Positions 6,971-40,068 of a DNA stretch of 64,000 nucleotides are shown piece after piece. Location of the stretch: the NCBI GenBank assembly GCA_965644315.1, contig CBFFRQ010000086.1, forward strand, positions 59,878-123,877. The letters are read 5' to 3'. Positions within the stretch are counted from its first letter, which is position 1; every line of letters begins with the position of its first letter. The notes below the pieces were generated by a model. The model had not been told where the DNA came from. It worked only from the letters and a program-made list of their open reading frames with translations, and searched no databases. Source of the stretch: Caecitellus pseudoparvulus. Lineage: Eukaryota; Protista; Bigyra: Bicosoecida. Both the position numbers and the translations under genes were made by a program.

Positions 6971-7660
6971 GCTGGCTAATGCAGCACCTTGGTGCAACGA
7001 ATTCCGCACAAGCCAATGCGTCGGGAAGCCGAATCACGGTGCAGGCCTGCGCCCTAGCGAAGCGGATGAGATACCTGGGAAAAAGGTGGGATGCTAAAAT
7101 ATATGCAGGTTGATGAAATGCACCGACTCCGCTGCAGTTGACTTCGTCCGTTCTGGTGAGGGGGAGCCGCTTCTGAGTGCGCGGAGCCGGTGCTCCCCAC
7201 TGCCAGCGGCCGGGCGCACAAGTGCAGAACGACTCCCCCCCGAAAGGGAAAAATTGGATTGAGACACCTGCGCAAAATGCACTCTGATTCGCCCGAGGCC
7301 TGCAGCGCGCGCCCCCTGCTTCGCGTTGGCAAAGCGGTGCTGGCACTTCACAGAGTGGAACCCAGGCTTCCTGGCAATCCCTGTGGAAAGTCTCGCACAC
7401 GCTGCCTCCATGGTGTCGTGATGGATGCCTGATCGATGAAGCACGGCTTGGTGGCGCGCAGACAGGCGGCTCCCTGCCACTGTAACTTGCCCTCGGATTC
7501 GGACCGCCGGCCGAACACACACACTCCCACCGACAAAAACAGGACACGCCTCCTTGAATCCCTTGACTACACGGGGGGTGCGACCTTGTTCCTGTGCAGG
7601 GCACCTGGGGTGTGACAAGCTTGTGGTGTCTCAGGTAGCCGAGTCAACGGACGAAACGCC

Positions 7661-9224
7661 ATGGCAGCGGCACCGCCTTCAGAATCGAGCACCGCCGCCT
7701 TCGGGACAGAGTTCGTGCTACGATGCCTTGCTCACGAGGCAAATAGCCCTGCTATCTCCACGATGACATCAGGTTTGCCTTTCTTCGTCCCCGGCCTTGT
7801 CATTCCGGGCGATGGCGCGCACGAGGTGTACAGCAGCACGCCATCTCCTGGCCCACGCCAAGGCCCTCCAGTCGGGTATCGCGTCGCGAACGAAACAGCG
7901 CTAGCAGAACTCTTCAAGAAGGCGGCCAGTTGCACAACTGAAAGTGCTGGACGTGGTGAGCACTCCGAGGTCTGCTGGCTCGTGGCGCCGCCCCCATCAG
8001 AATCCGCAGAAGTAAGTCCAAGCCCCTGCCGCCAACCCTGTCCCACGGCCCTCTGAACGCTGCCTGAAACCCTTGCAGGAGCTGACCGAAGCCCAACTGG
8101 CACAAAATCTAAAGGCGCCTTCATGGCTCCCAGGCTCTGTGCTGGTGCCGGGCTGGGTGCGGCCGACATTCACAGTGGAAGCGATCGCGTGTTGCACTGG
8201 TCCGGTGTCTTTGACCATCAAGCGATGTGGAGGAAGCTCCACGAGCAAACCAGATTCACCACACCCTGTTTCCGTGAAGGATGAAGCTATTGACGAAGCT
8301 AGCCTTTCTGTGCTTCAGCAGTGCGGGGAGGCACTTTGGCTGTTGACCACAGCCAACGCGCCTGGCGTGCAGTTCATGCAAAGCACGTGGAGCTTCAGAC
8401 ACAGCGGATTTCCAGCGTTGTTTTCCGTAGTCGGGACGAGCTACGTCGCGGCACCCGACCTGAGACATGAAACCCCAGGGGAGCTCAAAGCGCAGCGACC
8501 TGGTACTGCACCTTCAAACGCACGAGACTCTGCAGCACAGGGCGCTCCCACTCGACGCCCACGCAGCGCGCAGGACCTTGTACGACTTCATGCCACCTAC
8601 GCCAAGGAGCTGCTGCCCAGCAAGCCCAGCGGGCGGGCAGGGCGACTGCCGCTGGCCAGGCTGCGTGCAGGCCCACAAAGCGACGTGCGCAGCAAGGACT
8701 CCTTCACGTCAGAGTTTCTGGAGCGGCTGGCCTCGACGAAGCAAGGACAGCTGCTGGCAACTGCCACAAGCTCAACAGGCCAAGTGCATTCTAAGGGTGC
8801 AGAGGGCGGGCCAATTCTTGAGTCTGGCAGCAAGGCATGGCGAGCCCGGCTGAATCAGCCCCTGGCCTACCTCAGGGCAGATGCACTGCACAGCTTTTCA
8901 CTGACAGCACACGCACACCCCAGCTTCAAAACCATGTTTGCCATCATGGGCATTCTGCTTCAAGGCAGAGCCCTTTCCTGGCAAGCTGCAGTCGTGGCGC
9001 TGAGGAAGGGCGACGGATTCATCCGCCAACTGCAACGCTTCAGTGCCGAGGAGGTGCCGCTCGCTCGCGCCCAAGCTGCCATGGACCTGCTGCCAACGTG
9101 CACTGCACTCACGCCTGACATGGCTGCACTGCAGCATGCCCAAGCCGGCCACCTGGCAAACTGGACCATTCACGCGGCTTTCTGGGCTGCGGCCCACCAT
9201 GGCCTGCCACCACCTTCCACATGA
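7661..9224 (+). CDS. Hypothetical protein with C-terminal dynein microtubule-binding-domain (MT stalk tip)-like region
   Basis: Two ORFs are joined by an intron (gtaagt at about 8012 to ttgcag at 8078). The C-terminal pattern ILL..LSW....FI..L..F....AGHLANWT resembles a dynein MTBD. Confidence 0.5.
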
Positions 9225-11571: not shown

Positions 11572-14500
11572 ATGGCCTTAATTCAAGACACCATCACAGG
11601 GTATGTCCCTGCAGATGCATCCTTTAGCAGCATCTGCATACAACCATCTCTGTTGCTGCGCAGAGCACTGCGAGTTGCGGCAAAAGAGCCTGGCCTGAAC
11701 AGGTACCTCTTCGTCGGGGGACACTTGTTCAGAGCGCTACAAATGATGGTATTCCCGGTACTTGCTGTCTTGGCTGTCTCAAAAAATACCGGAGGTGAGG
11801 TCAAATCAAACGCACATAGGCAAAAGCGGCGACTTTCAATCATTGTACACTTCTTGCCCAGGTGACGGATTGCGTGAGCTGCTGGCAGTGTCACAGCTTG
11901 CGAGCGTCTCAAGATTTCACCCGAGCATCAATATCATAGTATTCTTTCTGGCTCTTGCTTGGGCAGCTACCTTCTCAGCGCTCGCCATCAACGTCGGGTG
12001 GAGAGCAGCGTAAGTGCAGGATACCGCAAGCAAACCACCTGAAGCGATCATTCTGTGAACTACCTCCCCCTCCCTGCAGCACCGCCACTGGACAACAGCG
12101 ATGGCAGCTCTACGCATGGAGAGCCATGGTCTTCGTCAGCAGCACCTTCCTCTTCCTCCCCACTCTCGGTGCGTCGCCCAACCCCAACACCACTCCCACG
12201 CCTGCCGCCCCCTCGCAAGACAAGCACCGCCGCGACCATGCCGCCCTCCTTGCACGGCCCCCCGCACCACTGCGCAGGCGCCCTCGTCGACACCATGGGC
12301 TGCCAAGGCACGGAGGCTGTCCTGGGCGGCTGCTGGCAAGGCGCACACCTCGCCCTCAGCGTCCTCGGCGCCGTGTTTGGCTGCATGTTCACGGCCCTGA
12401 CCATCGCTGCCGCCGCCGTGTACGTCGACCGCACCCCCGGCACGACTGCATGGCATGCAGTGTCGGACGGGCGCGCAGATGCCACCATGCTGCTGCAGCA
12501 GGTGGTGCTCATCATGGTGTACGGCATCGTCGGCGCAGCCAACCTTCCCGGCTGGCTGTCCGTGGTCATCCTGGGCTTCGTCGCGACGACCTGGCTGCAC
12601 CACTTCATCATGCGGCAGCCGCACGCTGTGAGCTTCATGAACAGTCTGCGGGCGGGGTGTGGCGCAGTCTTCGCGTGGGGCGTCGTGTGCCTCGCTGTCG
12701 CGCTGCTGCGGGGCAGCTCCGATGTCGGCCTGCTCTTCTTCACAGGTGCCGTGCTCAGTGCCGCCCTGGCCCACTTCATGGTGCTGCGCCGTCGCATGAT
12801 GTTGCTGCAGGCCCAGGCAGTGGACGTGTCGTCAGATGTGGACCTGTCACTGTGGGCTCGCACCCGCCTGCAGCTGGCACACGACACGACGTACTCGGTG
12901 CTGGCGCTGCCTGCAGCTGTGTGGTTGGGGGGCGGCACGTTGTTGGCTGGGTGGGAGAGTCGAGCGAGCAGTGACGGTCTGACAGCCCGGCAGCAGGTGG
13001 AGGCGCTGCTGCGGGCGGTGCTGCCGCAGCAAAGCGAAAGCGACGCCTCCAAAGCCGATCAAACTCCGTATGTGCACAGCAAAGCAAAACGCCCAGGCAA
13101 CTTTACATCACATTCCTTGTTTCTTGCTTTGCACAGATTGCTGTACCAGGATGACGATAGTGAAGACTTCAGCCCCGTTGCATCGCTTCACTCCGAAGCT
13201 GGCCCCAGCCCCCGCCTCACTGAATCAAGATCATCATCGTTCAGAGTTGAGGGCGGGAAGGGTGCCTCTCTGGCTGCTGCTCAGCAAGCTCGCCGCATGA
13301 TCGCTGGGGGGGCGAAAACAGTGGCTCGCTCGCAGCGGAGCGGGGGCGGAGATGCTGAAGATGCTGATACTGATCTTGACACAACATCTCCTCGGGCCGC
13401 CATCGCCACGGCCCTGGTAATGCTCGTGCATGGTGAGCTGAGGGCACGAAATGACGACGCCAAGCTGTCTGCGACCCTCCTCATGCTCCTCGCCGACATG
13501 CGCGCCCACTGCCTCAAGAACAAGTTCATGGAGCTCATGGCCCTCTCACAAGCCAAATCACACGCCTCCCTCCCATGGGACGTCCAGTTCTGGGTCGAAC
13601 AACGCCTCCAAGTCCTCCGCACCGTGCAAGAGCATGCCACAGGCGAAGGCGACCTCAGCCCCGTCGACCGCCTGCTGTTCGACCAGCACTTCACATGGAT
13701 CATGAAGCACCAGCGTGCCTGGTACCGAGGCCTGGCCAGCATGTTCAGGGAGCTGGCCTCACCCACACCCGACATGGCTGCTCTGCAGGTCTCCGCGCAG
13801 GGCCTCGCTGACGCCCTCATCGACACCGAGCACAACTTCAGGGAGCTCATGGCCATCAACAAGAACTCCGTCAAGGTGCTGCGGGCCAAGGCAAACTACC
13901 TCATCCGCATCCGCAGGGCTGATGCCGAGGGCGCCGCCCTCCTCTCCCGCGCAGAGCGCCTGGAGGCCGCCGCCCTCTCACGCACACAACGAGAGGTGTC
14001 ACACTTCAAGCTCCTGGCCAACGGCGGCGAGCACCTCGTCATGGACGACACCGCAGCAGTCATTGTGGCCAACGGCGAGATGGCGCACCTGGGCGAGATC
14101 ACCAAGGTCAACGCCGTCGCAGCGGCACTCTTCCGACGCACCAAGAACAACATGGTCGGGCAGAACCTCAGCACCCTCATCCCCCCGCCCATCTCAGACA
14201 TGCACGACATGTTCCTCAGGCGCTACGCAAATACTGGAAAGACCCGCCTCATGAACAACACCCGCAACCTCCTGGGACTCGACTCCACCGGCGCCATCTT
14301 TCCTGCACGAGGCACTCTGCGTGAGACGCCACCCCTGGAGGGCAGCTCGGCGGCACAGTTCACCATGCTCATGCAGCCACTGCGGGTGGCGGAGCACCAC
14401 CTGCTCTTCGCGGGGCCAGCGCAGGGCTACCAGATCTGGGCTGGAGACGCCGAGAGCTACAAGCTCTTCGGCATCACCTACCGCTCCCTGGGCGAGACAG

Positions 14501-17442
14501 CCGTGTCAGCTGTGCAGTTCCTGCCCGAGGTCGACATGGCCTTCACAGCCGCGTGGCGCGCGCAGCGCGCGGCCATGGAGGAAGATGGCGCCGACACTGA
14601 CGAGGCTGGTGCGCCCATGAGTCTGCCCATGGCCAGCCGCGATGCAGGCGGCACTGGCTCGCGTCGGCGGTCCCTGCTGCAGGCAGACAAGGCATTCCAG
14701 CGCACACCTGTGACGAATGTGACGAGTGAGCACGTGAAGCATGTGTTCGCGATGGTGCAGAAGATCATGCTGCCGTCGGCGGGGGGCGTGCTGTACTTGT
14801 TGTCGTGGAAGCACACTGCCGAGATGCAAGGTGTTGTGGGAAAGGCACACGGCCTGCACAGCAACAAGAACGCCACTGCCCCATTGGCCGGAAAAGGGGT
14901 GGCGGCTTCTCTCATGCATGGTTCCGGAGCAAAAGAAGCTGGGGTGCGATTTTCTGAGGAGAAGCCCGTGGAAATCGCCGGCCCTCCATCAACCCCACCG
15001 CTAAGTGATTCTCATGTGAGGGTGGACACTTCTGGGGCCGCTGCTAGCTCACAGACGTCTGAGCCAGGCACACCGCACATGCTGTCTCCCGGGCCACTGC
15101 ACCATACCTCTCTCTTCATGCAAAGTCCTGCACATGGACAGCACGGCCGCCCACCCAGACCGGCTGAACAACTAGGAACACCCACCTCAGCAAGGAGCAT
15201 GCAGTTCCACAAACAAACATCTGACCTGCAAGCATCTAGTCCATACATGGAAAAGCCTGCTCCCGAAGTACCTGGGCACTCTGGAAACAGTAGCGAAACA
15301 GGGACGTCATCCTTTTCAGGGTCAGCGTCCACCGCCGCCACTCGCCACTCCCTCTGGACCAAACACGTCCTCGACATCACCGCCAGCGAGCAGCAACACC
15401 CCGTCGTACTCCACCTCCGCCTCTCCTTCCTCGCACAACTCATCCTCCTGCTCGCATTCTCCGTCGCCATCTTCGTCATGCGGGTCGACGCCGTCGAATC
15501 TCTGTCAGTGCTCGTCACTGCCATGAAGCTCGGAGGTGAGCGCCTCCTCCACGCCCGGGCCGCCGTCATGCTCGCCACCTCCATGGTGCTCGTCAACACC
15601 GGCGTGCACGTGGACTCCATCGCATCCCTGCGCACCAAGCTCACGGCAGAGCTGGACACCCTGTCCACCATCACCTCGGACCTGCAGCACTCCCTCGGAT
15701 CCATGCAGAACAAGCTGGGCTTCCATGTGGACGACTACACCCTGCCTGTGACCGGTGCACATGGCTCACTGCAGTACCTCACGCCCTACGACGCGACGGT
15801 ATGGCTGCTGGGCCACCTGAGTGTCGTGCGCGACCTGCCTGATGCCGAGGTCACGACAGACCACCCCAGCGTCGGGGCTGTGCTCAACGCCACCTCCCTG
15901 CTCAGCGACGTCTTCCCACGCAGCGTGCGGGAGGTGGAGAGTGCCACCGCACAGTGGATCGAGCATCACAACCTGGAGGAGGCCATCGTCACTGTCTCCG
16001 GCCTCGTCGTCGCAGTGGTGCTGGTGGGCTCCCTGTCCATGCTCTTCATCTCACGCCTGGCGTCCCACCGTGTGTTGGTGCTGCGGGCGATGGGCAGCAT
16101 GCCAGTGCGCATGGTGAAGGCGCTGGCGCGGGCGTCACTGCAGGAGGGGCGTCGTCACTTGGCGATGTTGGCGAACGCGGACGAGGCGGAGGATGATGTG
16201 GGTGTGGTGGACGACGTGGAGGGGGGCGGCTCAGCCTCGCCCGATGTTATTCCATACACGCAATCCTTTAAAGGGCCAATACAACCGCTTGCGGTCGCGC
16301 AAGAAAAGGATATCGAGCAAGCGACAGAGTCTCAGGCAGGTTCGTCCGGAAGAAGAGGAAGCGCAAAGAACACTAAGCACTCTTCTGCATTCCGGACTGA
16401 AATGCTCGACTCGTCCCGGTTCAGGACAGCTGCGCTTACTCGAATGATGGCCCCCACCGTCCTCATCTTCGCATTCCTCGCCGGCATCTGGTCTGACTGG
16501 TTCATCACCACCTCCGCACTCCTCAAAGACGCTGAACGCACTTACGCCGCACAGGAAACCGCCGTGCACAGCACCGCCGCACTGCAAACCATCCTCTCCT
16601 CCATGCTTGTCCTCGTCAGGGCTGGCGCCGTGCCTGGCGCTGTCGCTGCCGTCGATGTCAGCCTCGCCGCAGCCTTGGGCGGCCTGCAGACACTCGTGCA
16701 GGGCACCGCCGCAGGCAGCCTCACCAGCAGCCAGCTGCCCGCCATCCAAGACGGCACGTGGGCGGCAGGAGTCCTGACCGAGGATGCCTGCGCCGTGCAG
16801 GGCGGACTGTACGACATGGCTGGCTGTGCTGCCTTCGCCTCTGGCCTCCTGGCCACCTCCGGCGTGCAGGGCGGCATGCTGCGCTTCACGTCGCAGGCCT
16901 CCGAGCTGACGTCCCAGGTGCAGAGTGGCGCCATCGCAGTGGGCCTGAACGCCAGCCAGGTCGACACCCTCCTCGCCTCCCAGCGCTACGCCGCCACCGT
17001 CCTCGCCAACGGCACCGAAGCCCTCAGCCGCAGCCGCTTCCTGCACCGCTCAGTGCACCCCTACATGCTGGGCACCTGCACGGCGCTGGCAGAGGAGTTC
17101 CACGATGACACACGCGGCCTGCATGAGGCAGCCCTGGGCCGATCACAGGCCCTCACCGCCGTCCTGCTCTGCCTCATGGTGGTGTCCATGGTGGCGTGGA
17201 TCTGGCCAGCAGCTCGGCAGCTGGGCAAGGATGTGTTTGCGACGCATGCTCTGCTGGCTGCTGTGCCGCCTGAGGTGCAGGTGCGGGTGCCGAGCATGAA
17301 GGCGGCCCTGGTGAAGATCGCTGAGCTGACGGCGCAGAGTGGGTCGGACGGCACGCTGACGGACATGGGCGCGATGTTGGGCTTCGACGAGGATGATGAA
17401 GAAGAAGGGGGGCCTTCTGAAGAGCAGGGCCCTCAAGTGTAA
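11572..17442 (+). CDS. TmcB/TmcC-like multi-pass membrane protein with TPR-like helical region and PAS domain (copy 1), 5' end spliced
   Basis: N-terminal TM bundle, then WDVQFWVEQR/FRELMAINKNSVKVLRAKANYL helical region and PAS domain GEITKVNAVAAALF..MVGQNLSTLIPPPISDMHDMFLRRY. Four C-terminal TM helices follow. Introns at about 11601-11662, 11795-11861, 12010-12079 and 12169-12277. Confidence 0.8.
12071..13037 (+). repeat. Near-identical block A (partner 19044-20010), includes intron 12169-12277
   Basis: Direct comparison: constant offset of 6973 with only scattered substitutions. Confidence 0.95.
13451..14828 (+). repeat. Near-identical block B (partner 20430-21807)
   Basis: Direct comparison: constant offset of 6979. 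Confidence 0.95.
15325..16223 (+). repeat. Near-identical block C (partner 22529-23427)
   Basis: Direct comparison: constant offset of 7204. Confidence 0.95.
16444..17396 (+). repeat. Near-identical block D (partner 23765-24717)
   Basis: Direct comparison: constant offset of 7321. Confidence 0.95.
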
Positions 17443-18340: not shown

Positions 18341-21300
18341 ATGGTGAGCTAGCTGATGCGAGCACCTAGAAGTCTTGAAACAAGTGCAGCCAACAATGAG
18401 GACACGCGCGGTGCCAGCCGCGGAAATTAGGCCCGGGAGCGCCAACTTGGCCAACTCCACTTCCCATGTCCCCCTCGCTCACAGGCTTCAAGAAAGGGTG
18501 CCAGCTCTGAGCGAGGATGGCTGGAAACAGTCCAGCTTGTATTTACTGAGTAAGCGCATGTGGAAGTCTCCATGGCTGCTTCGTTCCCACAGCAGAAACC
18601 ACGCGGCAACCTCGCAGAGCGCTCCGAGTAGCTGTCAAGGAGCCAGGCCTGAACAGGTATCTCTTTGTCGCCGGCCATGTACTTCGGACCCTCCAGATGC
18701 TTGTCTTCCCTATGCTCTCCACGCTCGCCATCGGGCGCAGCAGCGCGAGTGAGTTCCAGCCAGGTGCTTCGCAAGTGTACCACTCGCACGACCTTTGCCA
18801 CCGCGTCTTTCAGCCAGCGACGGCCTTGAGCAAGTGCTCACAGTCACTCAGCTAGTGAGCGTATCGCGGTTTGTCGGAGACGTGAGCGTTGTGGTCTTCT
18901 TCCTGGCCTTGGTTTGGGCCATCGCCTTCTCAGCGCTCGCCATCAACGTCGGGTGGAGAGCAGTGTGAGTTTCAGCGCATCAACAGCAGTCAAACTCGCT
19001 CGAGTTGGATGCCGCCGCACCTCCGCACTTCTTCCCTTCCCACTCCCTGCAGCACCGCCACCGGACAACAGCGATGGCAGCTCTACGCTTGGAGAGCCAT
19101 GGTCTTCGTCAGCAGCACCTTCCTCTTCCTCCCCACTCTCGGTGCGTCGCCCGACCCCAACACCACTCCCACGCCTGCCGCCCCCTCGCAAGACAAGCAC
19201 CGCCGCGACCATGCCGCCCTCCTTGCACGGCCCCCCGCACCACTGCGCAGGCGCCCTCGTCGACACCATGGGCTGCCAAGGCACGGAGGCTGTCCTGGGC
19301 GGCTGCTGGCAAGGCGCACACCTCGCCCTCAGCGTCCTCGGCGCCGTGTTTGGCTGCATGTTCACGGCCCTGACCATCGCTGCCGCCGCCGTGTACGTCG
19401 ACCGCACCCCCGGCACGACTGCATGGCATGCAGTGTCGGACGGGCGCGCAGATGCCACCATGCTGCTGCAGCAGGTGGTGCTCATCATGGTGTACGGCAT
19501 CGTCGGCGCAGCCAACCTTCCCGGCTGGCTGTCCGTGGTCATCCTGGGCTTCGTCGCGACGACCTGGCTGCACCACTTCATCATGCGGCAGCCGCACGCT
19601 GTGAGCTTCATGAACAGTCTGCGGGCGGGGTGTGGCGCAGTCTTCGCGTGGGGCGTCGTGTGCCTCGCTGTCGCGCTGCTGCGGGGCAGCTCCGATGTCG
19701 GCCTGCTCTTCTTCACAGGTGCCGTGCTCAGTGCCGCCCTGGCCCACTTCATGGTGCTGCGCCGTCGCATGATGTTGCTGCAGGCCCAGGCAGTAGACGT
19801 GTCGTCCGATGTGGACCTGTCACTGTGGGCCCGCACCCGCCTGCAGCTGGCACACGACACGACGTACTCGGTGCTGGCGCTGCCTGCAGCTGTGTGGTTG
19901 GGGGGCGGAACGTTGTTGGCTGGGTGGGAGAGTCGAGCGAGCAGCGACGGTCTGACAGCCCGGCAGCAGGTGGAGGCGCTGCTGCGGGCGGTGCTGCCGC
20001 AGCAAAGCGAGGGAGCACGAGGGGCCCACGAAGATGAAGGGTATGCAGACCACGCAGTCCATGATGACAGCGCGACTACCGCAACGGCATTGACCCCGGC
20101 CCACCATGGAGGCATCCATGCGCACTTTGGAGAGCCAGGTCCAGTGGATGTGCACCAGCCGGAGTACGAACCCGCCGAGAGTGTCAGGGGAACCCAGATG
20201 ACGATTCGCACAGATGATGTCCCATCCCTCTCCATGCCGCCAAGCACTTCGTTTGCTGCTGCTCAGCAAGCTCGCCGCATGATGGCAGGGGGCGCAAAGG
20301 CATCTGGCCGTTCCTCAAAGCGATCTCGAATCGCAGGCGGAGGTTCTGGAGCCATCGACGTTTCCTCAGCACGTACTGCAATCGCGACGGCACTGACTCA
20401 ACAAGTGCACACAGAGCTCAAGAGCCGTGATGACGACGCCAAGCTGTCCGCGACCCTCCTCATGCTCCTCGCCGACATGCGCGCCCACTGCCTCAAGAAC
20501 AAGTTCATGGAGCTCATGGCCCTCTCACAAGCCAAATCACACGCCTCCCTCCCATGGGACGTCCAGTTCTGGGTCGAACAACGCCTCCAAGTCCTCCGCA
20601 CAGTGCAGGAGCATGCCACAGGCGAAGGCGACCTCAGCCCCGTCGACCGCCTGCTGTTCGACCAGCACTTCACATGGATCATGAAGCACCAGCGTGCCTG
20701 GTACCGAGGCCTGGCCAGCATGTTCAGGGAGCTGGCCTCACCCACACCCGACATGGCTGCTCTGCAGGTCTCCGCTCAGGGCCTCGCTGATGCCCTCATC
20801 GACACCGAGCACAACTTCAGGGAGCTCATGGCCATCAACAAGAACTCCGTCAAGGTGCTGCGGGCCAAGGCAAACTACCTCATCCGCATCCGCAGGGCTG
20901 ATGCCGAGGGCGCCGCCCTCCTCTCCCGCGCAGAGCGCCTGGAGGCCGCCGCCCTCTCACGCACACAACGAGAGGTGTCACACTTCAAGCTCCTGGCCAA
21001 CGGCGGCGAGCACCTCGTCATGGACGACACCGCGGCAGTCATTGTGGCCAACGGCGAGATGGCGCACCTGGGCGAGATCACCAAGGTCAACGCCGTCGCA
21101 GCGGCACTCTTCCGACGCACCAAGAACAACATGGTCGGGCAGAACCTCAGCACCCTCATCCCCCCGCCCATCTCAGACATGCACGACATGTTCCTCAGGC
21201 GCTACGCAAACACAGGCAACACTCGTCTCATGAACAACACCCGCAACCTCCTGGGACTCGACTCCACCGGCGCCATCTTTCCTGTACGAGGCACTCTGCG

Positions 21301-24300
21301 TGAGACGCCACCCCTGGAGGGCAGCTCGGCGGCACAGTTCACCATGCTCATGCAGCCGCTGCGGGTGGCGGAGCACCACCTGCTCTTCGCGGGGCCAGCA
21401 CAGGGCTACCAGATCTGGGCTGGAGACGCCGAGAGCTACAAGCTCTTCGGCATCACCTACCGCTCCCTGGGCGAGACAGCCGTGTCAGCTGTGCAGTTCC
21501 TGCCCGAGGTCGACATGGCCTTCACAGCCGCGTGGCGCGCGCAGCGCGCGGCCATGGAGGAAGACGGCGCCGACACCGACGAGGCTGGTGCACCCATGAG
21601 TCTGCCCATGGTCAGCCGGGATGCAGGCGGCACTGGCTCGCGTCGGCGGTCCCTGCTGCAGGCAGACAAGGCGTTCCAGCGCACACCTGTGACGAATGTG
21701 ACGAGTGAGCACGTGAAGCATGTGTTCGCGATGGTGCAGAAGATCATGCTGCCGTCGGCGGGGGGCGTGCTGTACTTGTTGTCGTGGAAGCACACTGCCG
21801 AGATGCATGGCCGAAAGAGGGAGTCAGCCACAGCACATGGTGGCCGTGGCCGATCATCCAGCAATATCAGTGTTCGCAGTCGTTCAGCACGTGGCGGCAC
21901 TGACATCGACACAAGGCGACATCGGTCGACGAGCCATGTTGGTGCCAGCGTGGCGGAGGTGCCCATGTCGCCGACCATGGGACACGTGGCCCGCACCATG
22001 TCAGAAGTGGGCGATGGGGGCCGGGATGAGTCTGGGCAAACTGCCACCTTCCCCCAACCAGTTCCTGGGGCGGACGCTGCACCTACTGTGTTGCTTGCAG
22101 ATGCCGTGAACACTCCCAGCGACGCGACAGCAGAGCCAACGAAGCTGGTTCCCTCTGCGTTAGCACCACGGACGATGGGTACACGTGCAAAGTCTGTTGG
22201 AGCGAACAGCCCTTCAAGTCGTGAGCAGTCTGCTGCTTCTCCAACAGGGGGCATCGCGAAACCCACCCTGCTCGCTTCGTTCTCCTCACAAGAGTCCAAG
22301 GGCGGCAAGAAACTCTCCAGACTGCCGCCATCTGGCCAAAGGTCCGCGTCACTTACTCGTGCCACACGTTATTTGGGCTCAGGCCCACCGACGGGCGGGC
22401 CCACCCCCACCACGCCCATCGCAAGGGTGCCGAGTAGAGATCCGAGCCTTTCCAAAACGGACGGAAGCAACATCAACCCTTTCTCCGAGGACGAAAGTGA
22501 TATCGATGGTTCAGGATACGCCAACTCCGCGTCCACCGCCGCCACTCGCCACTCCCTCTGGACCAAACACGTCCTCGACATCACCGCCAGCGAGCAGCAA
22601 CACCCCGTCGTACTCCACCTCCGCCTCTCCTTCCTAGCACAACTCATCCTCCTGCTCGCATTCTCCGTCGCCATCTTCGTCATGCGGGTCGACGCCGTCG
22701 AATCTCTGTCAGTGCTCGTCACTGCCATGAAGCTCGGAGGTGAGCGCCTCCTCCACGCCCGTGCCGCCGTCATGCTCGCCACCTCCATGGTGCTCGTCAA
22801 CACCGGCGTGCATGTGGACTCCATCGCATCCCTGCGCACCAAGCTCACGGCAGAGCTGGACACCCTGTCCACCATCACCTCGGACCTGCAGCACTCCCTC
22901 GGCTCCATGCAGAACAAGCTGGGCTTCCATGTGGACGACTACACCCTGCCTGTGACCGGTGCACATGGCTCACTGCAGTACCTCACGCCCTACGACGCGA
23001 CGGTATGGCTGCTGGGCCACCTGAGTGTCGTGCGCGACCTGCCTGATGCCGAGGTCACGACAGACCACCCCAGCGTCGGGGCTGTGCTCAACGCCACCTC
23101 CCTGCTCAGCGACGTCTTCCCACGCAGCGTGCGGGAGGTGGAGAGTGCCACCGCACAGTGGATCGAGCATCACAACCTGGAGGAGGCCATCGTCACTGTC
23201 TCCGGCCTCGTCGTCGCAGTGGTGCTGGTTGGCTCCCTGTCCATGCTCTTCATCTCACGCCTGGCGTCCCACCGTGTGTTGGTGCTGCGGGCGATGGGCA
23301 GCATGCCAGTGCGCATGGTGAAGGCGCTGGCACGGGCGTCACTGCAGGAGGGGCGTCGTCACTTGGCGATGTTGGCGAACGCGGACGAGGCGGAGGATGA
23401 TGTGGGTGTGGTGGACGACGTGGAGGGTGGTGGAAGGAGCGGTGCGTCTGCGGTGATGCCTTCCCGGCAAGATAGCGTGGAGGTTCCCCTTGGTCCACCC
23501 ATGGCCTCTGCTGGACGCAAGTCCGACGCAGCAGCCGCCCACACTCACAGGTCAGTGCAGTCCACGGAGTCCTCAGCAGGAGGAGGTGTCATTGACGACA
23601 GTTCTCACAAGTCATCACAAGCCCCGCCCGGTGTGCTGCCTGGCGAAGCCTTCTCAGGCGGCGGCGCCCTTGCCGGCACCGGGCTTCGCGCTGTATCTCG
23701 CACGGGACGCAACCGAGGTGACCTTGTGGACTCCTCGCATTTCAAAGCCTATGCCTTGTTGCGGATGATGGCTCCCACCGTCCTCATCTTCGCATTCCTC
23801 GCCGGCATCTGGTCTGACTGGTTCATCACCACCTCCGCACTCCTCAAAGACGCTGAACGCACTTACGCCGCACAGGAAGCCGCCGTGCACAGCACCGCCG
23901 CACTACAAACCATCCTCTCCTCCATGCTCGTCCTCGTCAGGGCCGGCGCTGTGCCTGGCGCCGTCGCTGCCGTCGACGTCAGCCTCGCCGCAGCCTTGGG
24001 CGGCCTGCAGACGCTCGTGCAGGGCACCGCCGCAGGCAGCCTCACCAACAGCCAGCTGCCCGCCATCCAAGACGGCACGTGGGCGGCAGGAGTCCTGACC
24101 GAGGATGCCTGCGCCGTGCAGGGCGGACTGTACGACATGGCTGGCTGTGCCGCCTTCGCCTCCGGCCTCCTGGCCACCTCCGGCGTGCAGGGCGGCATGC
24201 TGCGCTTCACGTCGCAGGCCTCCGAGCTGACGTCCCAGGTGCAGAGTGGCGCCATCGCAGTGGGCCTGAACGCCAGCCAGGTCGACACCCTCCTCGCCTC

Positions 24301-24826
24301 CCAGCGCTACGCCGCCACCGTCCTCGCCAACGGCACCGAAGCCCTCAGCCGCAGCCGCTTCCTGCACCGCTCAGTGCACCCCTACATGCTGGGCACCTGC
24401 ACGGCGCTGGCGGAGGAGTTCCACGATGACACACGCGGCCTGCATGAGGCAGCCCTGGGCCGATCACAGGCCCTCACCGCCGTCCTGCTCTGCCTCATGG
24501 TGGTGTCCATGGTGGCGTGGATCTGGCCAGCAGCTCGGCAGCTGGGCAAGGATGTGTTTGCGACGCATGCTCTGCTGGCTGCTGTGCCGCCTGAGGTGCA
24601 GGTGCGGGTGCCGAGCATGAAGGCGGCCCTGGTGAAGATCGCTGAGCTGACAGCGCAGAGTGGGTCGGACGGCACGCTGACGGACATGGGCGCGATGTTG
24701 GGCTTCGACGAGGATGAAGAAGACATAGCACATGGAATGTCTGATGAAGTGTTGGTTGCCACGATGCCCGATGCCCCTGAAGGTGCAAACTCCTCCTCGT
24801 CAGATGGAGCACCAGGAGCAGCATAG
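18341..24826 (+). CDS. TmcB/TmcC-like multi-pass PAS protein (copy 2, tandem paralog); start uncertain
   Basis: Same domain blocks as copy 1. The 5' exons encode ALRVAVKEPGLNRYLFVAGH, homologous to copy 1 ALRVAAKEPGLNRYLFVGGH. The start is tentatively an ATG at 18341 followed by an intron ending at 18484. Confidence 0.8.
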
Positions 24827-34249: not shown

Positions 34250-37200
34250 TCACCCTTCGCCACGCGCTTTCATGGTCAAGTTGATCACGAACTCCCTGAA
34301 GACCTTCATCGCGCGCTTGTCCTTGTTCAGGTACTGCGTGGGCACACTGAGCAGCAAGCTTCGGGTTCCGTCCAGCTGCGCCTGCATCTCTTCCAAGTGC
34401 GGCAGGTGCACCGCAAGATGCAACGCCAAAGACAAGATAAGAAAGGCGACATTCATGAGGACGTTCGCTTCTTGTGATGATTTGGCGGTTGTCCTCGTTG
34501 CATCGTCAAAGATGTTGTCCAGCGATCTCATGCCGTACCGAATGTACGGATCTTCCATCGTCACCATGTCACGAAGGCGCGTGAACAAGACCATCAAGTC
34601 CTCTTCTCGATTCTCCACTCCAGAACTGGTGCTACTGAGCGTCCTGTTACTGAGGACTGCGCCAATTTCTTCCGCGATTCGGTCGCTGGTGATGTTTCGC
34701 AAGGCAGCTGCGACACCACGACCCCGCTGCAAGTAGCGCTGCAAGACGATTTGCATGCCAAGCTTCATGACGCCTCCGTCAAACGTCGTGCAGTTTGGAG
34801 GGAGTAAATAGTGCTTCTCAATGCCTTCGCAAGAGTTTTCGTAGAAAATTTGGAAGGCCGGACCGTTAACTTTCAAGCCATCGACTTCTTGCAGTCCATC
34901 CTGAGCTGCAGAGCCTTGGAGTAACGTTGTCAGGCGCACCAGACTCATGTCCAGTGCTGTGCCAAGTTGCTCCAGCGCCGCTGCTCGAGCAGGACCACGG
35001 GGCAGAGTTACTGCCAAGCTGGAGGCTTGGTTCACCTTCATCACCTGGCTGGACACTTGCTGTGTCGCGTACAGCCGCCGAATGTCCTGCAACGTAGAGC
35101 GCTGAGAGATGAGCAGGTTCCCCATGGTGCCACCCAACCAAGTAATAGTGAGGGCAACTTGCAGCATAAGGATGCCCAGGTGGACGAGGGAGAAGTGCGA
35201 GGTGTCCACTACATCTCGTTCTCCAATGCGCTGGGCGGACAGGTGCCACTTGGAAATGGTACGATTGGCGGCCACCATGCGCATCGCCCTGCTGTCCGTG
35301 CTGCTCGCAACGCTGTCACCAGAGGTAGGCACGCTCACTTTAGCGACGCCCCCTTCGTCTTTACCAGCCCCGGCCTCCTTGTCGGCTGCTGCGTCCTCGT
35401 CCATGACGGCTTCCGCAGCAGCTGTCGATTCCTTGGCAGTGCTCTCCTTGAACTCCACAAGCCTCGCCTTGGCGAAGCGTTTCAGCTTTGAAAGAGCAGA
35501 CTTGGGCAGAGCTAGCAGCACCGCCAGCGCTTGCTGGCGAGACGTAGAGATTTTGGAGACCATGGCTGAAAGGTACAGCCCCAAGCCCAGGCCCAGGACT
35601 GACGTTGCAACGATTGCTGTCACCAAGATCAGGAGCTGAATGTCAGACATAAACGACGCAGTCTGGAACTGACGAAGAGCAATTGTCGCGTTCAAGCTGT
35701 CCACAAGCACCAGGGGGACGTTGCGCACTGTGTATGTGAAAGAGGGGTTATCCATGTTGAATGCAGAGGCATTCGACTTGACCAGCGAGTCCAAATTGGC
35801 AATGGCGTTCCCCATCGCTGCGTACAATGTCATGGTGCCTCGCGTGTCCCCCACGTCGTACACGTCAACGGTGGACTTCAGCCCGCCTGCTTTCAGCCGC
35901 TCGGCGTGGGTGTCAATCTGTTCCGAGTCGGAGACAACCTCACGCCATCGATCGCGAACAGTGGAAGCTTCCCTGGCCAGCGATGCCTTGATGGCATCCA
36001 CAGTTCCGATCGGAGCACCAAGCGAGTGCAAGTTTAGCATGGCCGCACTCACCGTGGCACCTTGGATGGTGCGCAGCACCTGTCCTGCATGCGTCAGAGA
36101 CTGCACCCGCAGCGCGGTCTGCTCCTTGATGATGTCCAGGCCAACGAGCTGCGTGATACCCAGCAGCACGGCAAACACCAGTGCTGCTCGCAGACCTCCT
36201 TTGATGCCCCTGATTGACGCCTCAGTGTACCCCGTGCGGCGAATAAGAGATAGCAGCACAGTTCGTGGGGCTGTGGCAGAGTTGGAGGATGTGGTGCTTG
36301 ATGCAACTGACCCCCCCCCAGGGCCAAATGTGTTGCCCGCCTCGCTCGCACCATCCCCGAATCCACTGATCGCACTTGCCACCGAACCAGGAGACTTTAC
36401 CATGGCCAGGACTGTAGATTTGGGGCGAGCGTCTGCGGGAAGCGCGCGAGCCCCACGCTTGGCATCCTTGCTGCTGCTCGGGGCGGCTTGAGGCTTGCCA
36501 TCTGCGCGGAGTATGCTCCGCGGTGGGTCTTCCCGTTTCACGAAGCTCTTCGTTTTTTTCTTCAAAGACGGCATGCTCGCATGGCGTGGAAGGGTCTTGT
36601 CCTCAGTGGGCTCCGATGCAGGCAAGAGCTGTCCAGCACTGCGTGAGTGGGCACGAGTGAAGCGACGCTCCAGCCCTGCCTCTTCGCCTTCTTCGGGTTC
36701 AGCACTGCCACCTTGTTCACCAGCCTCCAACGTGCCGACTCCTCCATCCTCCATGATAAGTGGCTCGCTGTCCAGGGGAGGGGGCAGCTCAGTGCCCTCT
36801 TCCACCGGGCTGACGCGCTCCTCAGCTGGCGTGGGGTGTGCAGCGGCCGGGGACACGACCAACTCGTCCAGCGCTGCAGTGTCGATGGAGTCTGCTGCAC
36901 TCATGGCGTCGACTTCAGGCACTCGCATCCCGTCTGGGTTGCTGGCCCCAGTCTCCGCACTCTCGGGGACCGGGTGGGGAACGCGCACCTCGAGCCTGGA
37001 AGCAGCCCTGACCTTCTGAGGCGGCACAGGCTGGGGGCTCGCGAGGGAGTGAAGGCTGCGTGAGCTGCTGTTAGCTGTTGATGTCATGCTGCGGTCGAGC
37101 CGCCTACTGGGCTTCTTGCTGAAGGGCTGCCACATGACCAAAGCCACGGCCCCACTCAGTGAAGCCCCCGCAGCGACCGCGTCAGGCAAGGCGAGCAGCT

Positions 37201-40068
37201 GCACGTGCACGGACATCTTTTCACCCCCAGGGAACACCATTGGTGCAACTGCATCGCCAACAGATGCTTTAAGACGCTTCCAGGAGAAGTCCCGGCGTGG
37301 TTGCTCCAGTGCGGCCTGCACCACTGCCGCCAGTTCAGGCAGAACCTCGTCCAGGTCCACGTCTGCCGGCCCATCTTGAGACGTCTCCACATTCAACATG
37401 CGGTACGCGCTTGCTGACGCGGAGAGCACCGACAGACCATCGCTGGCTAAGCCACAGAGCATGAAGTCATTGTCGATAGTGACATCTTGGAATACGCAGA
37501 CAAAGTTTGCTGTGATTTCATCCTCCTCTGGCGGCGCCTCCTTCAGGGTGAACCGCACCGGCCACAACTGATGGAACGAGTCCTCCACGACTGTAAGGCG
37601 CGTGTTGCGAAGCACGTGCTGGTTTCCTCGTCGAACATGTTCCAGCAGCATGTTTTCCAGCAGCCTGTCCAGAGGCTCCGGCAGGAGCTCGTAGAGGGGC
37701 GTGCCCACCATGTCCACTGGTGATCTGCGGAACAGCGCCGCTGCTCGGCTATTCACGAGCGTGATCTCCCCTAAGTTGGAAGGATCACCAGAAGCATGCA
37801 CGACTGCGGTCGATTCCACGCCCATGGACACTTGTCGCGTCTCGTCCATGAGCACAAACTTTGCGACGTGCCTGCTGAAGCGACCAGCCATGGTCTCCTC
37901 CAAGCGCTCGGCTTTGGCAATCATTTCGGACCCCTTCACCATCTTCCCCAGCACCGTGATCATAAAGGCTCCGTACTGGCGAAGGACGTTCACATTCTGC
38001 CGCTGCATGCGCAGTTGGGTGCTGTAGTTCTCCTCCGCGTCGCCGATGGCCTTGTGCAGCTTGCGCCCCAACTTTGCCAAGGCTGCCAAATCGGGCACTG
38101 GCGCTGCCAGCTCCTCCCACATGCGCACCGCCTGCTGTCGTATGCTGGTCTCTGCCTTGAGCGCCAGGGCTCCGTGCTGCTCCATCATCAGCCTGTCCAC
38201 CTGGGAGGTGATGTTGCCACTGCGGGGGCCACCGCCGTCTTCCTTCGTGCTCTCTCGCAGCTGTCGGTTTCGCTGGTAAACAAAGAACTGCACGTCCAGC
38301 GCATTCGTGGCCTTGCGCGCCATGCTGAGTGCTGTCAGCTCAAGGTACCGAGAGCTGTCGGAGGAGCGGTAGAAGTCCGCAGCTGCCATGTGCACCATGC
38401 CATTGTCAGGGAACCTCGCAATGCACCAGCGGAAGGCGAACTCGGCGGCATCACGCAGCTCCTGAGTGAGCTGGTCCCGTTGGGCCGGGCTGAGAATGGA
38501 GTCCAGTGAGGCACCTTGTCCTGCCATGGCGATGAGAAGCGCGTCAACTGTGGGAGCAGTAGTCACGCGTCCACTTGCGCTCGGTATGCCTCCTGCTGTG
38601 CTTGCTGCGTCATCCCCGCCGCTGGTGCCCCCCGACCCGACACCTACCACATCCCCCATGAGTGCATCTATATTGCTGCGGTTCGTGCGCATCATGGTGT
38701 GCATCATGAACAGTCGGGTTCGCGCCCACAGCATGGCATCAACGGATGCCGTCAAGTCCTGCAGCGGCAGGGCGGCGATGTGGTGCCGCCAGGCCCGCGC
38801 CGCCAGGCCGCCGGCAAAGGTAGCGACTGGGAGCAAAATGCACCAGCTGACTACCAGCAGCGGTTGTGGGGAGTACAGTGCCAGGAGCAGGGCAACGACA
38901 GCGAGGCAGTAGGCCCCACCGAGGCCAGCCTGCAACTCGTTCATGCGCGGGTTGACAAAGGGCTGCACTCGAATGAAAGAGTGCAGCCACAGTGCCCCAG
39001 CCAGGAGGAGCAAGACCACTTTGAACCACAGAGCCTGGCCTCGTAGCGTAGCATAGGCCACCATCAGCGCGATTTTCATGCCCAGCAGCCGCACATCAGC
39101 TCGCCCATCGGTCCGGGCACCAACATCGTCACACAGGAGGTGCCTCTTGATGAACACGCTCTGTGTCGCAAGTGCCAAGAAAACAAAAGGGGGCACTGTC
39201 AGCAGGACGGCGATGCAGCCAACGATGTGAGCTCCGTCCCAGCACCCAGTTGTGGCTCCTTCAAGCCCAGTGCAATCCAGCCACCTCAGGGACAAGGACA
39301 CGCAAGGAACAAACAGCACAAGTGTGGACAGGCGCGCGACTCCACGGTGGAGTTGCAACATCCACTTCACCTGCGGTGCTCCAGTGTGAAACTTTCGCCC
39401 GATGGCGGCTGTGAGCAGCGTGAACATGAGCATCCACATGAGCGCAAAGGAGAACACCACCGTATACAACATCGGTCCGATGAGACTGTTCAAGGACGAC
39501 GCATTGAAAATCGAGAGGACGGAAGTGACAGTTGAGCTGGCGGCTGTGAAAGGAGGGGGCTTGAGAGCGTTTCCGACACCGTAGGTTCTGAGTGTGACTC
39601 CAGCCCTCCGGCTGACACATTGTGGAAGCAGGGTGGGGAGGCCAGCACTCACTCGAGGCAGTCCCTGCTCGTTTCAGCTCTTCTTGAAGACTAGATAGAG
39701 GGAAGAGGCACCTGTGGGGGGGCAGGGGAAGACCCGTCACGTGTGCAGCGGAAGTAGCTGTGCTGCAGGGTGGCCGCAGGTGCGGGCCCAAGCGCTGCAG
39801 GCTGCCTTGACGCACATCTGCACTGCAGCCACCACGAGCATGACGTGTGTGGTCGTTTTTCCTGAGCTAGAGTCCTTGGCAGCGACGTAAAGTGCCTGTG
39901 TGTTCGTGGAGTACGTGAGTGAACGAATGGTGCACTGTTGTTGCAATCTATGCTCTGCAGGAGCCTGGCCGCTGTGACCTGGGCGGCACAAAGCACAGCA
40001 CCTACCCCGAAGATGCCTCCGCGAAGAGCATTGCTCCATTTCTCCAGGGTGCTGAGCCGCATGGACAT
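34250..40068 (-). CDS. TmcB/TmcC-like multi-pass PAS protein (copy 3, divergent paralog), 5' end spliced
   Basis: GCWDGAH, DGRADV, LDVQFFVYQR, NVNVLRQYGAF, PAS GEITLVNSRAAALF..MVG..LYELLPEP and VVDTSHF are collinear with copies 1 and 2. An upstream exon encodes ALYVAAKD. Confidence 0.8.

What the first reader, a model, noticed from the sequence alone, without database searches (positions are those of the whole stretch)
12071..17396. Each homogenised block has its own C-rich to G-rich skew gradient
Seen (approximate hand counts in 60-nt windows, C/G near block start vs near block end): A 30/8 vs 11/30, B 25/12 vs 15/22, C 29/11 vs 11/28, D 26/10 vs 14/26. Much of this is synonymous: CTC/GTC/GCC/ACC at block starts and CTG/TTG/GTG/GCG at block ends. 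The gradient resets at every linker, so each block is dyad-symmetric, with both strands G/T-rich toward their own 3' end. Inference: this is the footprint of a strand-asymmetric mutation or repair bias acting at conversion-tract edges (single-stranded DNA exposure or biased heteroduplex repair), repeated many times with fixed boundaries. I do not recognise a described case of such a sawtooth inside coding paralogs.
Basis: partly seen in the sequence, partly recalled or inferred. Interest (0 to 1): 0.8.

Follow-up and report, generated by a model that had tools for sequence, protein, structure and literature searches.

The report
Strand-skew sawtooth in gene-converted blocks
Two neighbouring copies of a large receptor gene in a marine protist overwrite each other in four sharply bounded blocks, and each block starts rich in C and ends rich in G at silent codon positions, which looks like a lasting imprint of how DNA strands are exchanged and proofread during gene conversion.

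Summary

- **Blocks.** Copies 1 (12238-17442) and 2 (19211-24826) share four blocks that are 98-100% identical. The linkers between them are unalignable but coding.
- **Skew at silent sites.** At fourfold sites C:G runs 103:13 in the first sixth of a block and 21:82 in the last sixth. At block starts C/T-ending codons are 41:1 and A/G-ending codons 16:11. At block ends they are 21:13 and 3:36. Starts therefore avoid G and T, and ends avoid C and A, a dyad-symmetric pattern.
- **Edges.** The skew begins and stops within 60 nt of the homology edges.
- **Controls.** No random segment from 51 control ORFs of the same genome matches it more often than 1 in 10,000. It is absent at homologous columns of seven paralogues and orthologues.
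- **Replication.** It recurs, more weakly, in an independent 99.5% block of another paralogue pair.
- **Populations.** Contigs from four public runs break at the same edges.

Best explanation (inferred): strand invasion is polarised by the homology edges, and mismatch repair corrects G·T and G·G mismatches better than A·C and C·C. Gene conversion as the cause is likely; this particular mechanism is about even odds. I found no published description. The scan had noted a related G-ending codon excess in homogenised arrays elsewhere in this genome (s1-661158), but not this sawtooth.

The parts
12238..17442 (+). Copy 1 of a TmcB-like, PAS-containing membrane protein gene. The ORF is open from 12055 and the first ATG is at 12238.
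   Evidence: ORF list. Pfam PF25474 TPR_TmcB E=3.8e-8, above its cut-off, and a weak PAS match. NCBIfam FixL PAS region. First ATG.
19211..24826 (+). Copy 2, the tandem paralogue. The ORF is open from 18914 and the homologous ATG is at 19211.
12065..13037 (+). Homogenised block A (copy-2 counterpart 19038-20010). It includes about 170 nt upstream of the ATG.
   Evidence: blastn and MAFFT identity profile. A single 968-nt contig at double depth in three runs.
13450..14831 (+). Homogenised block B (copy-2 counterpart 20429-21810). It contains a small island of non-homogenised sequence at 14232-14247.
15322..16229 (+). Homogenised block C (copy-2 counterpart 22526-23433).
   Evidence: An 899-nt contig covering 15325-16223 in three runs.
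16441..17402 (+). Homogenised block D (copy-2 counterpart 23762-24723). Sub-block 16843-17402 is the most uniform part.
13038..13449 (+). Linker 1: unalignable between the copies, coding, fourfold sites unbiased.
   Evidence: About 45% identity. Stop-free only in the gene's frame, and GC at fourfold sites is 0.48. Single depth in the runs.
14832..15321 (+). Linker 2: same properties as linker 1.
16230..16440 (+). Linker 3: same properties as linker 1.
12065..12364 (.). C/A-rich start zone of block A.
   Evidence: first 240 nt: C114, G51.
12838..13037 (.). G/T-rich end zone of block A.
13450..13749 (.). C/A-rich start zone of block B.
14632..14831 (.). G/T-rich end zone of block B.
15322..15621 (.). 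C/A-rich start zone of block C.
16030..16229 (.). G/T-rich end zone of block C.
16441..16740 (.). C/A-rich start zone of block D.
17203..17402 (.). G/T-rich end zone of block D.
34250..39652 (-). Copy 3, an unconverted paralogue used as an internal control. It has no sawtooth.
   Evidence: CUSUM z = -0.7. Homologous columns show C:G 47:66 at block starts and 38:49 at block ends.

Best explanation
What is shown: the two tandem genes are kept identical by repeated interparalogue gene conversion in four blocks, each bounded by heterologous linkers. Inside every block the silent sites carry two layers. One is a general rise in G+C. The other is an edge effect: the first ~300 nt avoid G and T on the sense strand, and the last ~200 nt avoid C and A.

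Proposed mechanism (inferred):
1. A break inside a block is resected, and the 3'-ended single strand pairs with the other copy.
2. Pairing cannot pass the linker. A site near the left edge therefore always enters heteroduplex as recipient top strand on donor bottom strand. A site near the right edge always enters as recipient bottom strand on donor top strand.
3. Nick-directed mismatch repair removes the broken (recipient) strand only when it recognises the mismatch. Recognition is good for G·T and G·G, poorer for A·C and nearly nil for C·C.
4. On the invading strand, G is therefore replaced by C or A and T by C more often than the reverse.
5. New G-to-C, G-to-A and T-to-C changes spread to the sister copy and their reverses are erased. 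This is a transmission bias, and it has opposite sign at the two edges.
6. Repeated over many events with fixed edges, the result is a block that is C/A-rich at its start and G/T-rich at its end.
For: - **Specific to homogenised DNA.** The skew is absent from 19 unconverted relatives at homologous columns and from 51 control ORFs.
- **Confined to homology.** It switches on and off within 60 nt of the identity edges and is absent from the linkers.
- **Dyad-symmetric and base-specific.** It does not follow optimal versus non-optimal codons. At starts C:T is 41:1 but A:G is 16:11; at ends G dominates and T rises. A strand-exchange process fits this; translation does not.
- **Replicated.** The inverted pair L020/L022 has a 1339-nt block at 99.5%. 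Its first 240 nt show C:G 25:12, C:T 14:1, A:G 4:6. Its last 240 nt show 9:19, 14:6, 0:14 (p = 0.006). The 95.7% block of L017/L018 goes the same way but weakly (16:13 to 13:24).
- **Soft internal edge.** Inside block D, the best-homogenised sub-block starts at about 16843 and is followed by a renewed C-rich stretch (3:22 and 6:19).
- **Fixed edges and ongoing conversion.** Contigs of four runs end at the same edges at about twice the linker depth, and the copy-1/copy-2 differences are resolved differently among runs.
- **Ingredients are established.** The nick is always on the strand from the broken chromosome, and repair efficiency depends on mismatch type (PMC3649680). MutS hardly forms a sliding clamp on C·C (PMC3783165).
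- **Toy simulation.** These rules give a C-rich left edge and a G-rich right edge within about one heteroduplex length. Uniform recognition gives nothing, and the effect weakens at 6.6% divergence.
- **Scale.** The edge zones of 180-300 nt are of the order of the minimal efficient processing segments quoted in PMC3758752.
Against: - No direct evidence exists for where breaks fall, for heteroduplex polarity or for mismatch-repair specificity in this organism.
- The mismatch hierarchy cited here comes from E. coli MutS and, from my memory, from yeast.
- The toy model gives only about 1.7:1 at the edges against 5-10:1 observed. A population-level drive has to be assumed to close the gap.
- The mid-block plateau of C:G 1.6:1 in this pair is not predicted. 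The other pair has 55:79 instead.
- The G-rich blip at 14275-14394 in block B does not sit where a simple soft-edge reading would put it.
- The beta-tubulin pair shows no edge effect.
- All positive cases come from one gene family.
- Damage to resected single strands predicts the same base composition, so composition alone cannot separate the two mechanisms.
Confidence: 0.45

Rival explanations
1. Break hotspots lie in the linkers or flanks. The resected 3' single strands that reach into the blocks accumulate damage (C to T, C to G, A to G on the exposed strand), as seen around human meiotic hotspots. This leaves G/T-rich DNA to the left of each break and C/A-rich DNA to the right.
For: Polarity and base changes match. 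Hinch et al. 2023 (PMC7615360) report C>N and A>N on one strand and the reverse complements on the other side of breaks, over about 2 kb. The linkers have lower G+C and could be more open chromatin.
Against: - The skew collapses at the homology edge instead of ramping through the linker. Bins just outside the blocks read 12:8 and 9:13, if anything the opposite sign.
- Breaks in linkers repaired from the paralogue would homogenise the linkers, which stay unalignable.
- Other family members with the same domain-linker layout show nothing.
- The replicate block in L020/L022 is flanked by ordinary diverged coding DNA, not by special linkers.
- With breaks inside the blocks, this mechanism predicts the opposite polarity.
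Confidence: 0.12
2. Cause and effect are reversed. G-rich non-template DNA at block ends (and C-rich DNA at block starts for antisense transcription) forms R-loops or other structures that trigger the breaks starting conversion, so the skew is an initiator rather than a footprint.
For: Positive GC skew on the non-template strand is known to favour R-loops (established knowledge; review PMC13560373 listed, not read). The G-rich zones sit at fixed places.
Against: - This gives no account of how the skew arose or why it is dyad-symmetric.
- The G excess sits at every third base, and there are no G-quadruplex motifs.
- The A rise at starts and the T rise at ends have no role in R-loop formation.
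Confidence: 0.05
3. Selection on translation: codon choice changes near domain ends to slow ribosomes for co-translational folding, or to tune accuracy in folded domains relative to disordered linkers.
For: Blocks correspond to conserved protein segments and linkers to low-complexity segments. Mid-block usage resembles that of highly expressed tubulin.
Against: - The shift is by base, not by codon optimality. Starts combine optimal C-endings with non-optimal A-endings, and ends combine optimal G at purine sites with non-optimal T.
- The about 170 nt of block A upstream of the ATG is equally C-rich (C81, G34).
- Paralogues and orthologues with the same domains lack the pattern.
Confidence: 0.04
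4. A one-off burst of clustered, strand-coordinated hypermutation on single-stranded DNA during a single repair event, later copied to both genes.
For: Strand-coordinated clusters near breaks are known (PMC6786661, listed).
Against: - Eight edges in one gene pair, plus two in another pair, all have the right polarity.
- The net change is a gain of C (or G) from all three other bases, not a loss of one base.
- The edges are shared by several populations.
Confidence: 0.03

Closest known systems
GC-biased gene conversion raising GC3 in converted paralogues (for example histone and Hsp70 paralogues; recalled from memory, not checked here)
   Same: Silent-site G+C is much higher inside the converted blocks (0.82) than in the linkers (0.48-0.52) or in unconverted paralogues (0.63-0.68 for the closest ones).
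   Different: gBGC as described treats G and C alike and leaves G-to-C changes neutral. Here G and C are driven in opposite directions at the two ends of each tract, and A (at starts) or T (at ends) rises locally against the G+C trend.
Strand-asymmetric mutagenesis flanking human meiotic break hotspots (Hinch et al. 2023, PMC7615360)
   Same: Reverse-complementary base changes on the two sides of a recombination feature, at a scale of 0.1-2 kb.
   Different: That work describes a spectrum of new mutations around short-lived hotspots and reports no standing compositional sawtooth. Here the sign change is centred on blocks of paralogous homology and stops at their edges, and the most economical reading is biased correction rather than damage.
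Classical yeast heteroduplex genetics: preferential strand transfer and poor repair of C·C mismatches (Petes and Fogel laboratories, recalled from memory), and the MMR models of Lesecque et al. 2013 (PMC3649680)
   Same: The same ingredients: a defined invading strand on each side of a break, a nick on the broken strand, and mismatch-type-dependent repair.
   Different: Those are per-meiosis marker effects at allelic loci. A long-term genomic imprint of them at the edges of ectopic conversion blocks was not described in the papers I could search.
Strand bias of mismatch resolution in single-strand annealing (Pokusaeva et al. 2022, PMC9001825)
   Same: It shows that break geometry, not mismatch context, can set which strand wins, and argues that such biases shape base composition.
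   Different: That work concerns annealing between direct repeats with deletion, in mouse cells, where mismatch type had little influence. Here both repeats persist and the base identity matters.
Partial concerted evolution of receptor paralogues with divergent and homogenised segments
   Same: Sharp mosaic of near-identical and anciently diverged segments in neighbouring receptor genes.
   Different: No strand skew has been reported for those cases, as far as I could find.

Membership tests
Interlocus (ectopic) gene conversion / concerted evolution | Paralogues are near-identical over tracts that are flanked by much more diverged sequence | tested here: met
   Four tracts at 98-100% identity beside linkers at about 45%.
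Interlocus (ectopic) gene conversion / concerted evolution | Evidence of continuing transfer: sites that differ between copies are resolved differently in different strains | tested here: met
   In four runs the blocks assemble as single double-depth contigs. Sites 12822, 12834, 12858, 14055, 14421 and 14694 carry the copy-1 letter in some runs and the copy-2 letter in others. These are contigs rather than reads, so rare variants are not seen.
Interlocus (ectopic) gene conversion / concerted evolution | Paralogues within a species are closer to each other than to orthologues in sister species | not testable with these tools
   The closest proteins found are at most 59% identical and single-copy.
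GC-biased gene conversion | Silent-site G+C is raised in converted tracts relative to unconverted ones | tested here: met
   GC at fourfold sites is 0.82 in blocks, 0.48-0.52 in linkers, 0.65 in copy 3 and 0.68 in the closest paralogue.
GC-biased gene conversion | The bias is strand-symmetric: G and C are favoured alike and G/C changes are unaffected | tested here: not met
   C:G is 103:13 at block starts and 21:82 at block ends. A rises at starts and T at ends.
Break-hotspot strand-asymmetric mutagenesis | The skew is centred on the break site and continues through it with a sign change | tested here: not met
   The linkers show no ramp and the skew stops at the homology edge. There are few sites per bin, so this is moderate evidence.
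Break-hotspot strand-asymmetric mutagenesis | Break sites are mapped at the centre of the pattern | not testable with these tools
   No break or resection maps exist for this organism.
Replication-origin skew switch | One C/A-to-G/T switch per origin, with domains of many kilobases, independent of homology | tested here: not met
   Four switches occur in 5.3 kb, each inside a homology block, with resets at the linkers.
Transcription-coupled strand asymmetry | One sign of skew along a transcription unit, reversing with gene orientation | tested here: not met
   The sign flips seven times within one ORF. The pattern is invariant under reverse complementation.
TmcB-like proteins (Pfam PF25474) | Match to the TPR_TmcB model above the curated cut-off | tested here: met
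   33.7 and 33.6 bits against a cut-off of 27 for copies 1 and 2. At least 17 family members in the genome.

The most novel reading that the evidence does not exclude
Homology-bounded gene conversion leaves a general, previously undescribed signature. Each strand becomes C/A-rich where it acts as the invading strand and G/T-rich where its complement does, because mismatch repair handles G·T and G·G better than A·C and C·C. If this is general, the polarity of strand invasion, the heteroduplex length (about 200-300 nt here) and the in-vivo mismatch hierarchy could be read from a single genome sequence. It would also mean that G-to-C changes, usually treated as neutral with respect to conversion, are not neutral near tract edges.
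Probability: 0.4. Interest if true: 0.85.

Novelty: new variant of a known kind. Interest (0 to 1): 0.72.

Why it matters
- **A second, hidden bias.** Biased gene conversion is a major non-adaptive force on base composition and codon usage, and it is modelled as blind to the difference between G and C. This locus shows a strong, strand-specific G-versus-C (and A-versus-T) drive tied to the edges of conversion tracts. The drive is strong enough to give 5-10:1 ratios at silent sites and to override the local G+C trend.
- **Consequences if the repair explanation holds.** Classical per-event findings (which strand invades, which mismatches escape repair) would be linked to a durable genomic footprint. 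That footprint would give a sequence-only ruler for heteroduplex length and break position. It would also warn that codon-usage or selection tests on converted paralogues can be misled.
- **Testability.** The genome holds many other homogenised receptor blocks (earlier notes), so the idea can be tested directly.

Tried and rejected
- **Polyketide-synthase-like modular gene:** rejected. Pfam finds only TPR_TmcB and a weak PAS match.
- **Trypanosomatid origin:** no spliced-leader match, and relatives have mixed gene orientation. The organism stays unidentified. It is marine and widespread in metagenomes.
- **Linkers as introns:** rejected. All six linkers are stop-free only in the gene's frame, and their lengths differ between copies by multiples of three.
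- **Amino-acid composition as the cause:** rejected. The skew is at silent sites, and positions 1+2 stay within the paralogue range.
- **RNA or DNA pairing of G-rich ends with C-rich starts across linkers:** no inverted repeats.
- **G-quadruplex initiators:** no motifs.
- **Break inside the block plus single-strand damage, or damage to the displaced D-loop strand:** predicts the opposite polarity (reasoning; note).
- **Thymine-glycosylase-type G·T to G:C repair:** predicts G-rich starts, which is the opposite of what is seen (reasoning).
- **Further replicates:**
  - The beta-tubulin inverted pair gave no edge effect under extreme codon bias.
  - The C13 SRCR pair is a patchwork of blocks too small to score.
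  - The vitellogenin and ASC family searches did not locate the homogenised genes of the earlier notes.
- **Polarising the copy-1/copy-2 differences with the four runs:** too few sites near the edges.
- **First simulation:** timed out and was rewritten.
Full report
**Setting.** The window is G000:C86:59878-123877, from a 30.6-Mb, 215-contig assembly with about 63% G+C. I could not name the organism. The stretch is held by isolate-type runs and by many marine metagenomes, so this is a widespread marine protist. The finding covers one long ORF, 12055-17442, whose first ATG is at 12238. A second ORF, 18914-24826, has the homologous ATG at 19211. Both match Pfam TPR_TmcB above its cut-off and weakly match PAS. 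The genome holds at least 17 such genes of 1,600-2,700 codons. The closest proteins elsewhere are at most 59% identical and single-copy.

**The blocks.** Self-comparison finds four tracts shared by the two copies: A 12065-13037, B 13450-14831, C 15322-16229 and D 16441-17402. Identity within them is 98-100% and falls to about 45% within a few bases at each edge. The three linkers cannot be aligned, but they are coding. They are stop-free only in the gene's frame in both copies, and their lengths differ between copies by multiples of three.

I laid Logan contigs of four runs from different studies on copy 1.
- Contigs end exactly at the same edges (12070-13037, 13451 onward, 15325-16223, 16444 onward).
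- Block contigs have about twice the depth of linker contigs.
- Several sites that differ between copies in the window carry one letter in some runs and the other letter in others.

The block structure and its edges are therefore shared by several populations, and homogenisation is continuing.

**The observation.** The skew is almost wholly synonymous, as the pooled counts by sixths of a block show (p-values).

| Site class | First sixth | Last sixth | Comparison |
|---|---|---|---|
| Fourfold sites, C:G | 103:13 | 21:82 | p = 4e-26; intermediate sixths 83:30, 80:41, 83:40, 54:58 |
| Two-fold pyrimidine sites, C:T | 41:1 | 21:13 | p = 6e-5 |
| Two-fold purine sites, A:G | 16:11 | 3:36 | first sixth vs all other sixths (8:120), p = 2e-9 |

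Block starts thus avoid G and T on the sense strand, and block ends avoid C and A. This pattern reads the same on either strand.

Aligned on the edges in 60-nt bins, fourfold C:G behaves as follows.
- Left edge: 9:13 in the last linker bin, then 31:6, 31:3, 36:9, 36:7 and 33:9 inside the block.
- Right edge: 20:21, 11:32, 3:32 and 8:31 inside the block, then 12:8 in the linker.

The shape is therefore two edge zones of about 300 and 200 nt on a plateau, not a straight gradient. G+C at fourfold sites is 0.82 in blocks and 0.48-0.52 in linkers.

**Is it more than chance, and is it specific?**
- Against 20,000 random segments from 51 other ORFs of this genome (56,564 codons), the start-versus-end log odds of the four blocks are 2.48, 2.41, 2.42 and 3.57. 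The null has sd 0.59 and a 99.9th percentile of 1.95, and at most 1 in 10,000 segments reach the observed values.
- A within-gene shuffle test gives z = 4.1 for copy 1 and 3.6 for copy 2. Copy 3 gives -0.7, and the other ORFs of the window reach at most 3.1.
- None of 16 other family members or 3 foreign orthologues shows the sawtooth.
- At the very columns that align to the start and end zones, seven relatives have C:G near 1:1. Examples are 76:66 and 67:52 in the closest paralogue, against 142:26 and 41:116 in copy 1. Codon positions 1+2 barely differ.

**Replication.** All-against-all comparison of the fetched family loci turned up two more converted tracts.

The inverted pair on contig C31 (L020/L022) has a core of 1339 nt at 99.5% identity. 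It shows the same three-part signature (p = 0.006 for the fourfold contrast between first and last 240 nt).

| Zone of the L020/L022 core | Fourfold C:G | Two-fold C:T | Two-fold A:G |
|---|---|---|---|
| First 240 nt | 25:12 | 14:1 | 4:6 |
| Middle | 55:79 | 44:8 | 2:37 |
| Last 240 nt | 9:19 | 14:6 | 0:14 |

The 95.7% tract of L017/L018 leans the same way but weakly (16:13 to 13:24). A beta-tubulin inverted pair at 96.8% shows no edge effect. Its codon usage is extreme (no A at fourfold sites), so selection may mask any such effect. This is the main gap.

**How it most likely works.** The pattern is tied to homology and symmetric under strand exchange. It is also base-specific rather than following codon optimality. 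This rules out transcription, replication and translation as causes and points to the conversion process itself. Geometry supplies the polarity.
- After a break inside a block, the strand left single-stranded on each side is the one that runs 5' to 3' toward the break.
- It pairs with the complementary strand of the other copy.
- Pairing stops at the linker. Sites near the left edge therefore always enter heteroduplex with the recipient's top strand, and sites near the right edge with its bottom strand. Mid-block sites do both.

The nick that directs mismatch repair is on the broken strand, and repair efficiency depends on the mismatch (PMC3649680). MutS binds C·C about as weakly as homoduplex and hardly forms a clamp on it (PMC3783165). 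From memory, yeast shows the same ranking, with G·T and G·G well repaired and C·C poorly.

It follows that, on the invading strand:
- G opposite G, or G opposite T, is excised and replaced.
- C opposite C, or C opposite A, tends to stay.

G-to-C, G-to-A and T-to-C changes therefore spread between the copies near a left edge, and the complementary changes spread near a right edge. This predicts all three site classes observed, including the local rise of A and T against the G+C trend.

A toy simulation with these rules gave C-rich left and G-rich right edges within about one heteroduplex length. Uniform recognition gave no effect, and the effect weakened at 6.6% divergence because of co-conversion. 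That simulation is a check of logic, not evidence. The zone length of 180-300 nt is of the order of the minimal processing segments quoted for ectopic recombination (PMC3758752). Within block D, the part most uniform among runs starts near 16843 and is followed by a renewed C-rich stretch, as a soft edge would give.

**Rivals.**
- **Single-strand damage.** Damage to resected single strands, as around human meiotic hotspots (PMC7615360), gives the same base changes. It gives the observed polarity only if breaks lie in the linkers. In that case the skew should ramp through the linkers and the linkers should sometimes be homogenised, and neither is seen. With breaks inside the blocks it predicts the opposite sign.
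- **Thymine-glycosylase type of bias.** This also predicts the opposite sign.
- **R-loop or G-quadruplex initiation, hairpins across linkers, a translational pause at domain ends, and a single hypermutation burst.** Each fails on specific observations.

I put conversion as the cause at about 0.8, the mismatch-recognition mechanism at about 0.45 and linker-break damage at about 0.12. The remainder is an unidentified process.

**Unexplained.**
- The mid-block excess of C in this pair (about 1.6:1), which the second pair does not share.
- The G-rich blip at 14275-14394, next to the small unconverted island at 14232-14247 in block B.
- The size of the effect relative to the toy model.

**Comparison with what is known.** Raised silent-site G+C in converted paralogues is known. 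A strand-specific, dyad-symmetric G-versus-C sawtooth at tract edges is not something I could find in five full-text searches aimed at it. The nearest published relatives are the following.
- The hotspot-centred mutation asymmetry in humans.
- The flap-dependent strand bias in single-strand annealing.
- Classical yeast heteroduplex genetics (recalled from memory).

I file the finding as a new variant of a known kind: a new footprint of gene conversion.

**Earlier notes and handling.** Earlier notes of this scan report G-ending codon excess in homogenised arrays (s1-661158) and A/C-to-G/T skew flips at low-GC islands (for example s1-668623) in the same genome. They may be related, but I did not test them.

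Noticed in passing
L020:2310-3648 with L022 (G000:C31, about 622-643 kb): Two TmcB-like paralogues, 18 kb apart in inverted orientation, share a 1339-nt block at 99.5% identity inside an otherwise 50-90% identical region. It carries the same start-C/A and end-G/T signature.
   Followed up: yes
L017:3356-4393 with L018:3110-4147 (G000:C44, 280 kb apart): A third converted tract in the family, 95.7% identical over 1038 nt, with only a weak C-to-G trend.
   Followed up: partly
window 14232-14247: Six third-position differences within 16 nt inside block B, a small island that escapes homogenisation. In other runs the contigs also break at 14306-14385, where variants appear at 14340, 14349 and 14353. 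A G-rich blip at 14275-14394 lies beside it and is not explained.
   Followed up: partly
L051/L052 (G000:C80:81151-88410) and L053 (G000:C13:320975-324352): Beta-tubulin is present as an inverted pair 4 kb apart (96.8% over 1622 nt, including sequence upstream of the main exon) plus a third copy at about 95%. Codon usage is extreme: no A at fourfold sites and C:G about 2:1. There is no edge skew.
   Followed up: partly
G000:C13:934330-940351 (L034-L037): Two adjacent SRCR-domain genes form a patchwork of 100-350-nt identical tracts interrupted by short diverged patches. The last about 150 nt of the homologous region is extremely G-rich (for example C2, G30 in 50 nt).
   Followed up: partly
L020:7232-8903: Three short-period tandem arrays (7232-8102, 8268-8563, 8647-8903; copies 84-99% alike) lie downstream of the TmcB-like ORF.
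   Followed up: no
G000:C210:123-14327: Three LRR-rich ORFs of 1701, 1912 and 1546 codons lie in tandem. The DNA could not be fetched.
   Followed up: no
window 53294-53389 and 53634-53729: A 96-nt direct repeat at 99% identity, 340 nt apart.
   Followed up: no
window 12065-17402 in public runs: The stretch is held at 57-81% of sampled words by isolate-type runs of three coded organisms and by marine metagenomes of several studies. The organism is therefore widespread in the sea, and natural population data exist for a polarised test.
   Followed up: partly
other pieces of the genome (earlier notes s1-668623, s1-668513 and others): Earlier readers report gene-free low-GC islands of about 3 kb with an A/C-to-G/T skew flip. 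This is the same polarity as inside the converted blocks. Whether the islands are also homogenised between chromosomes was not checked.
   Followed up: no
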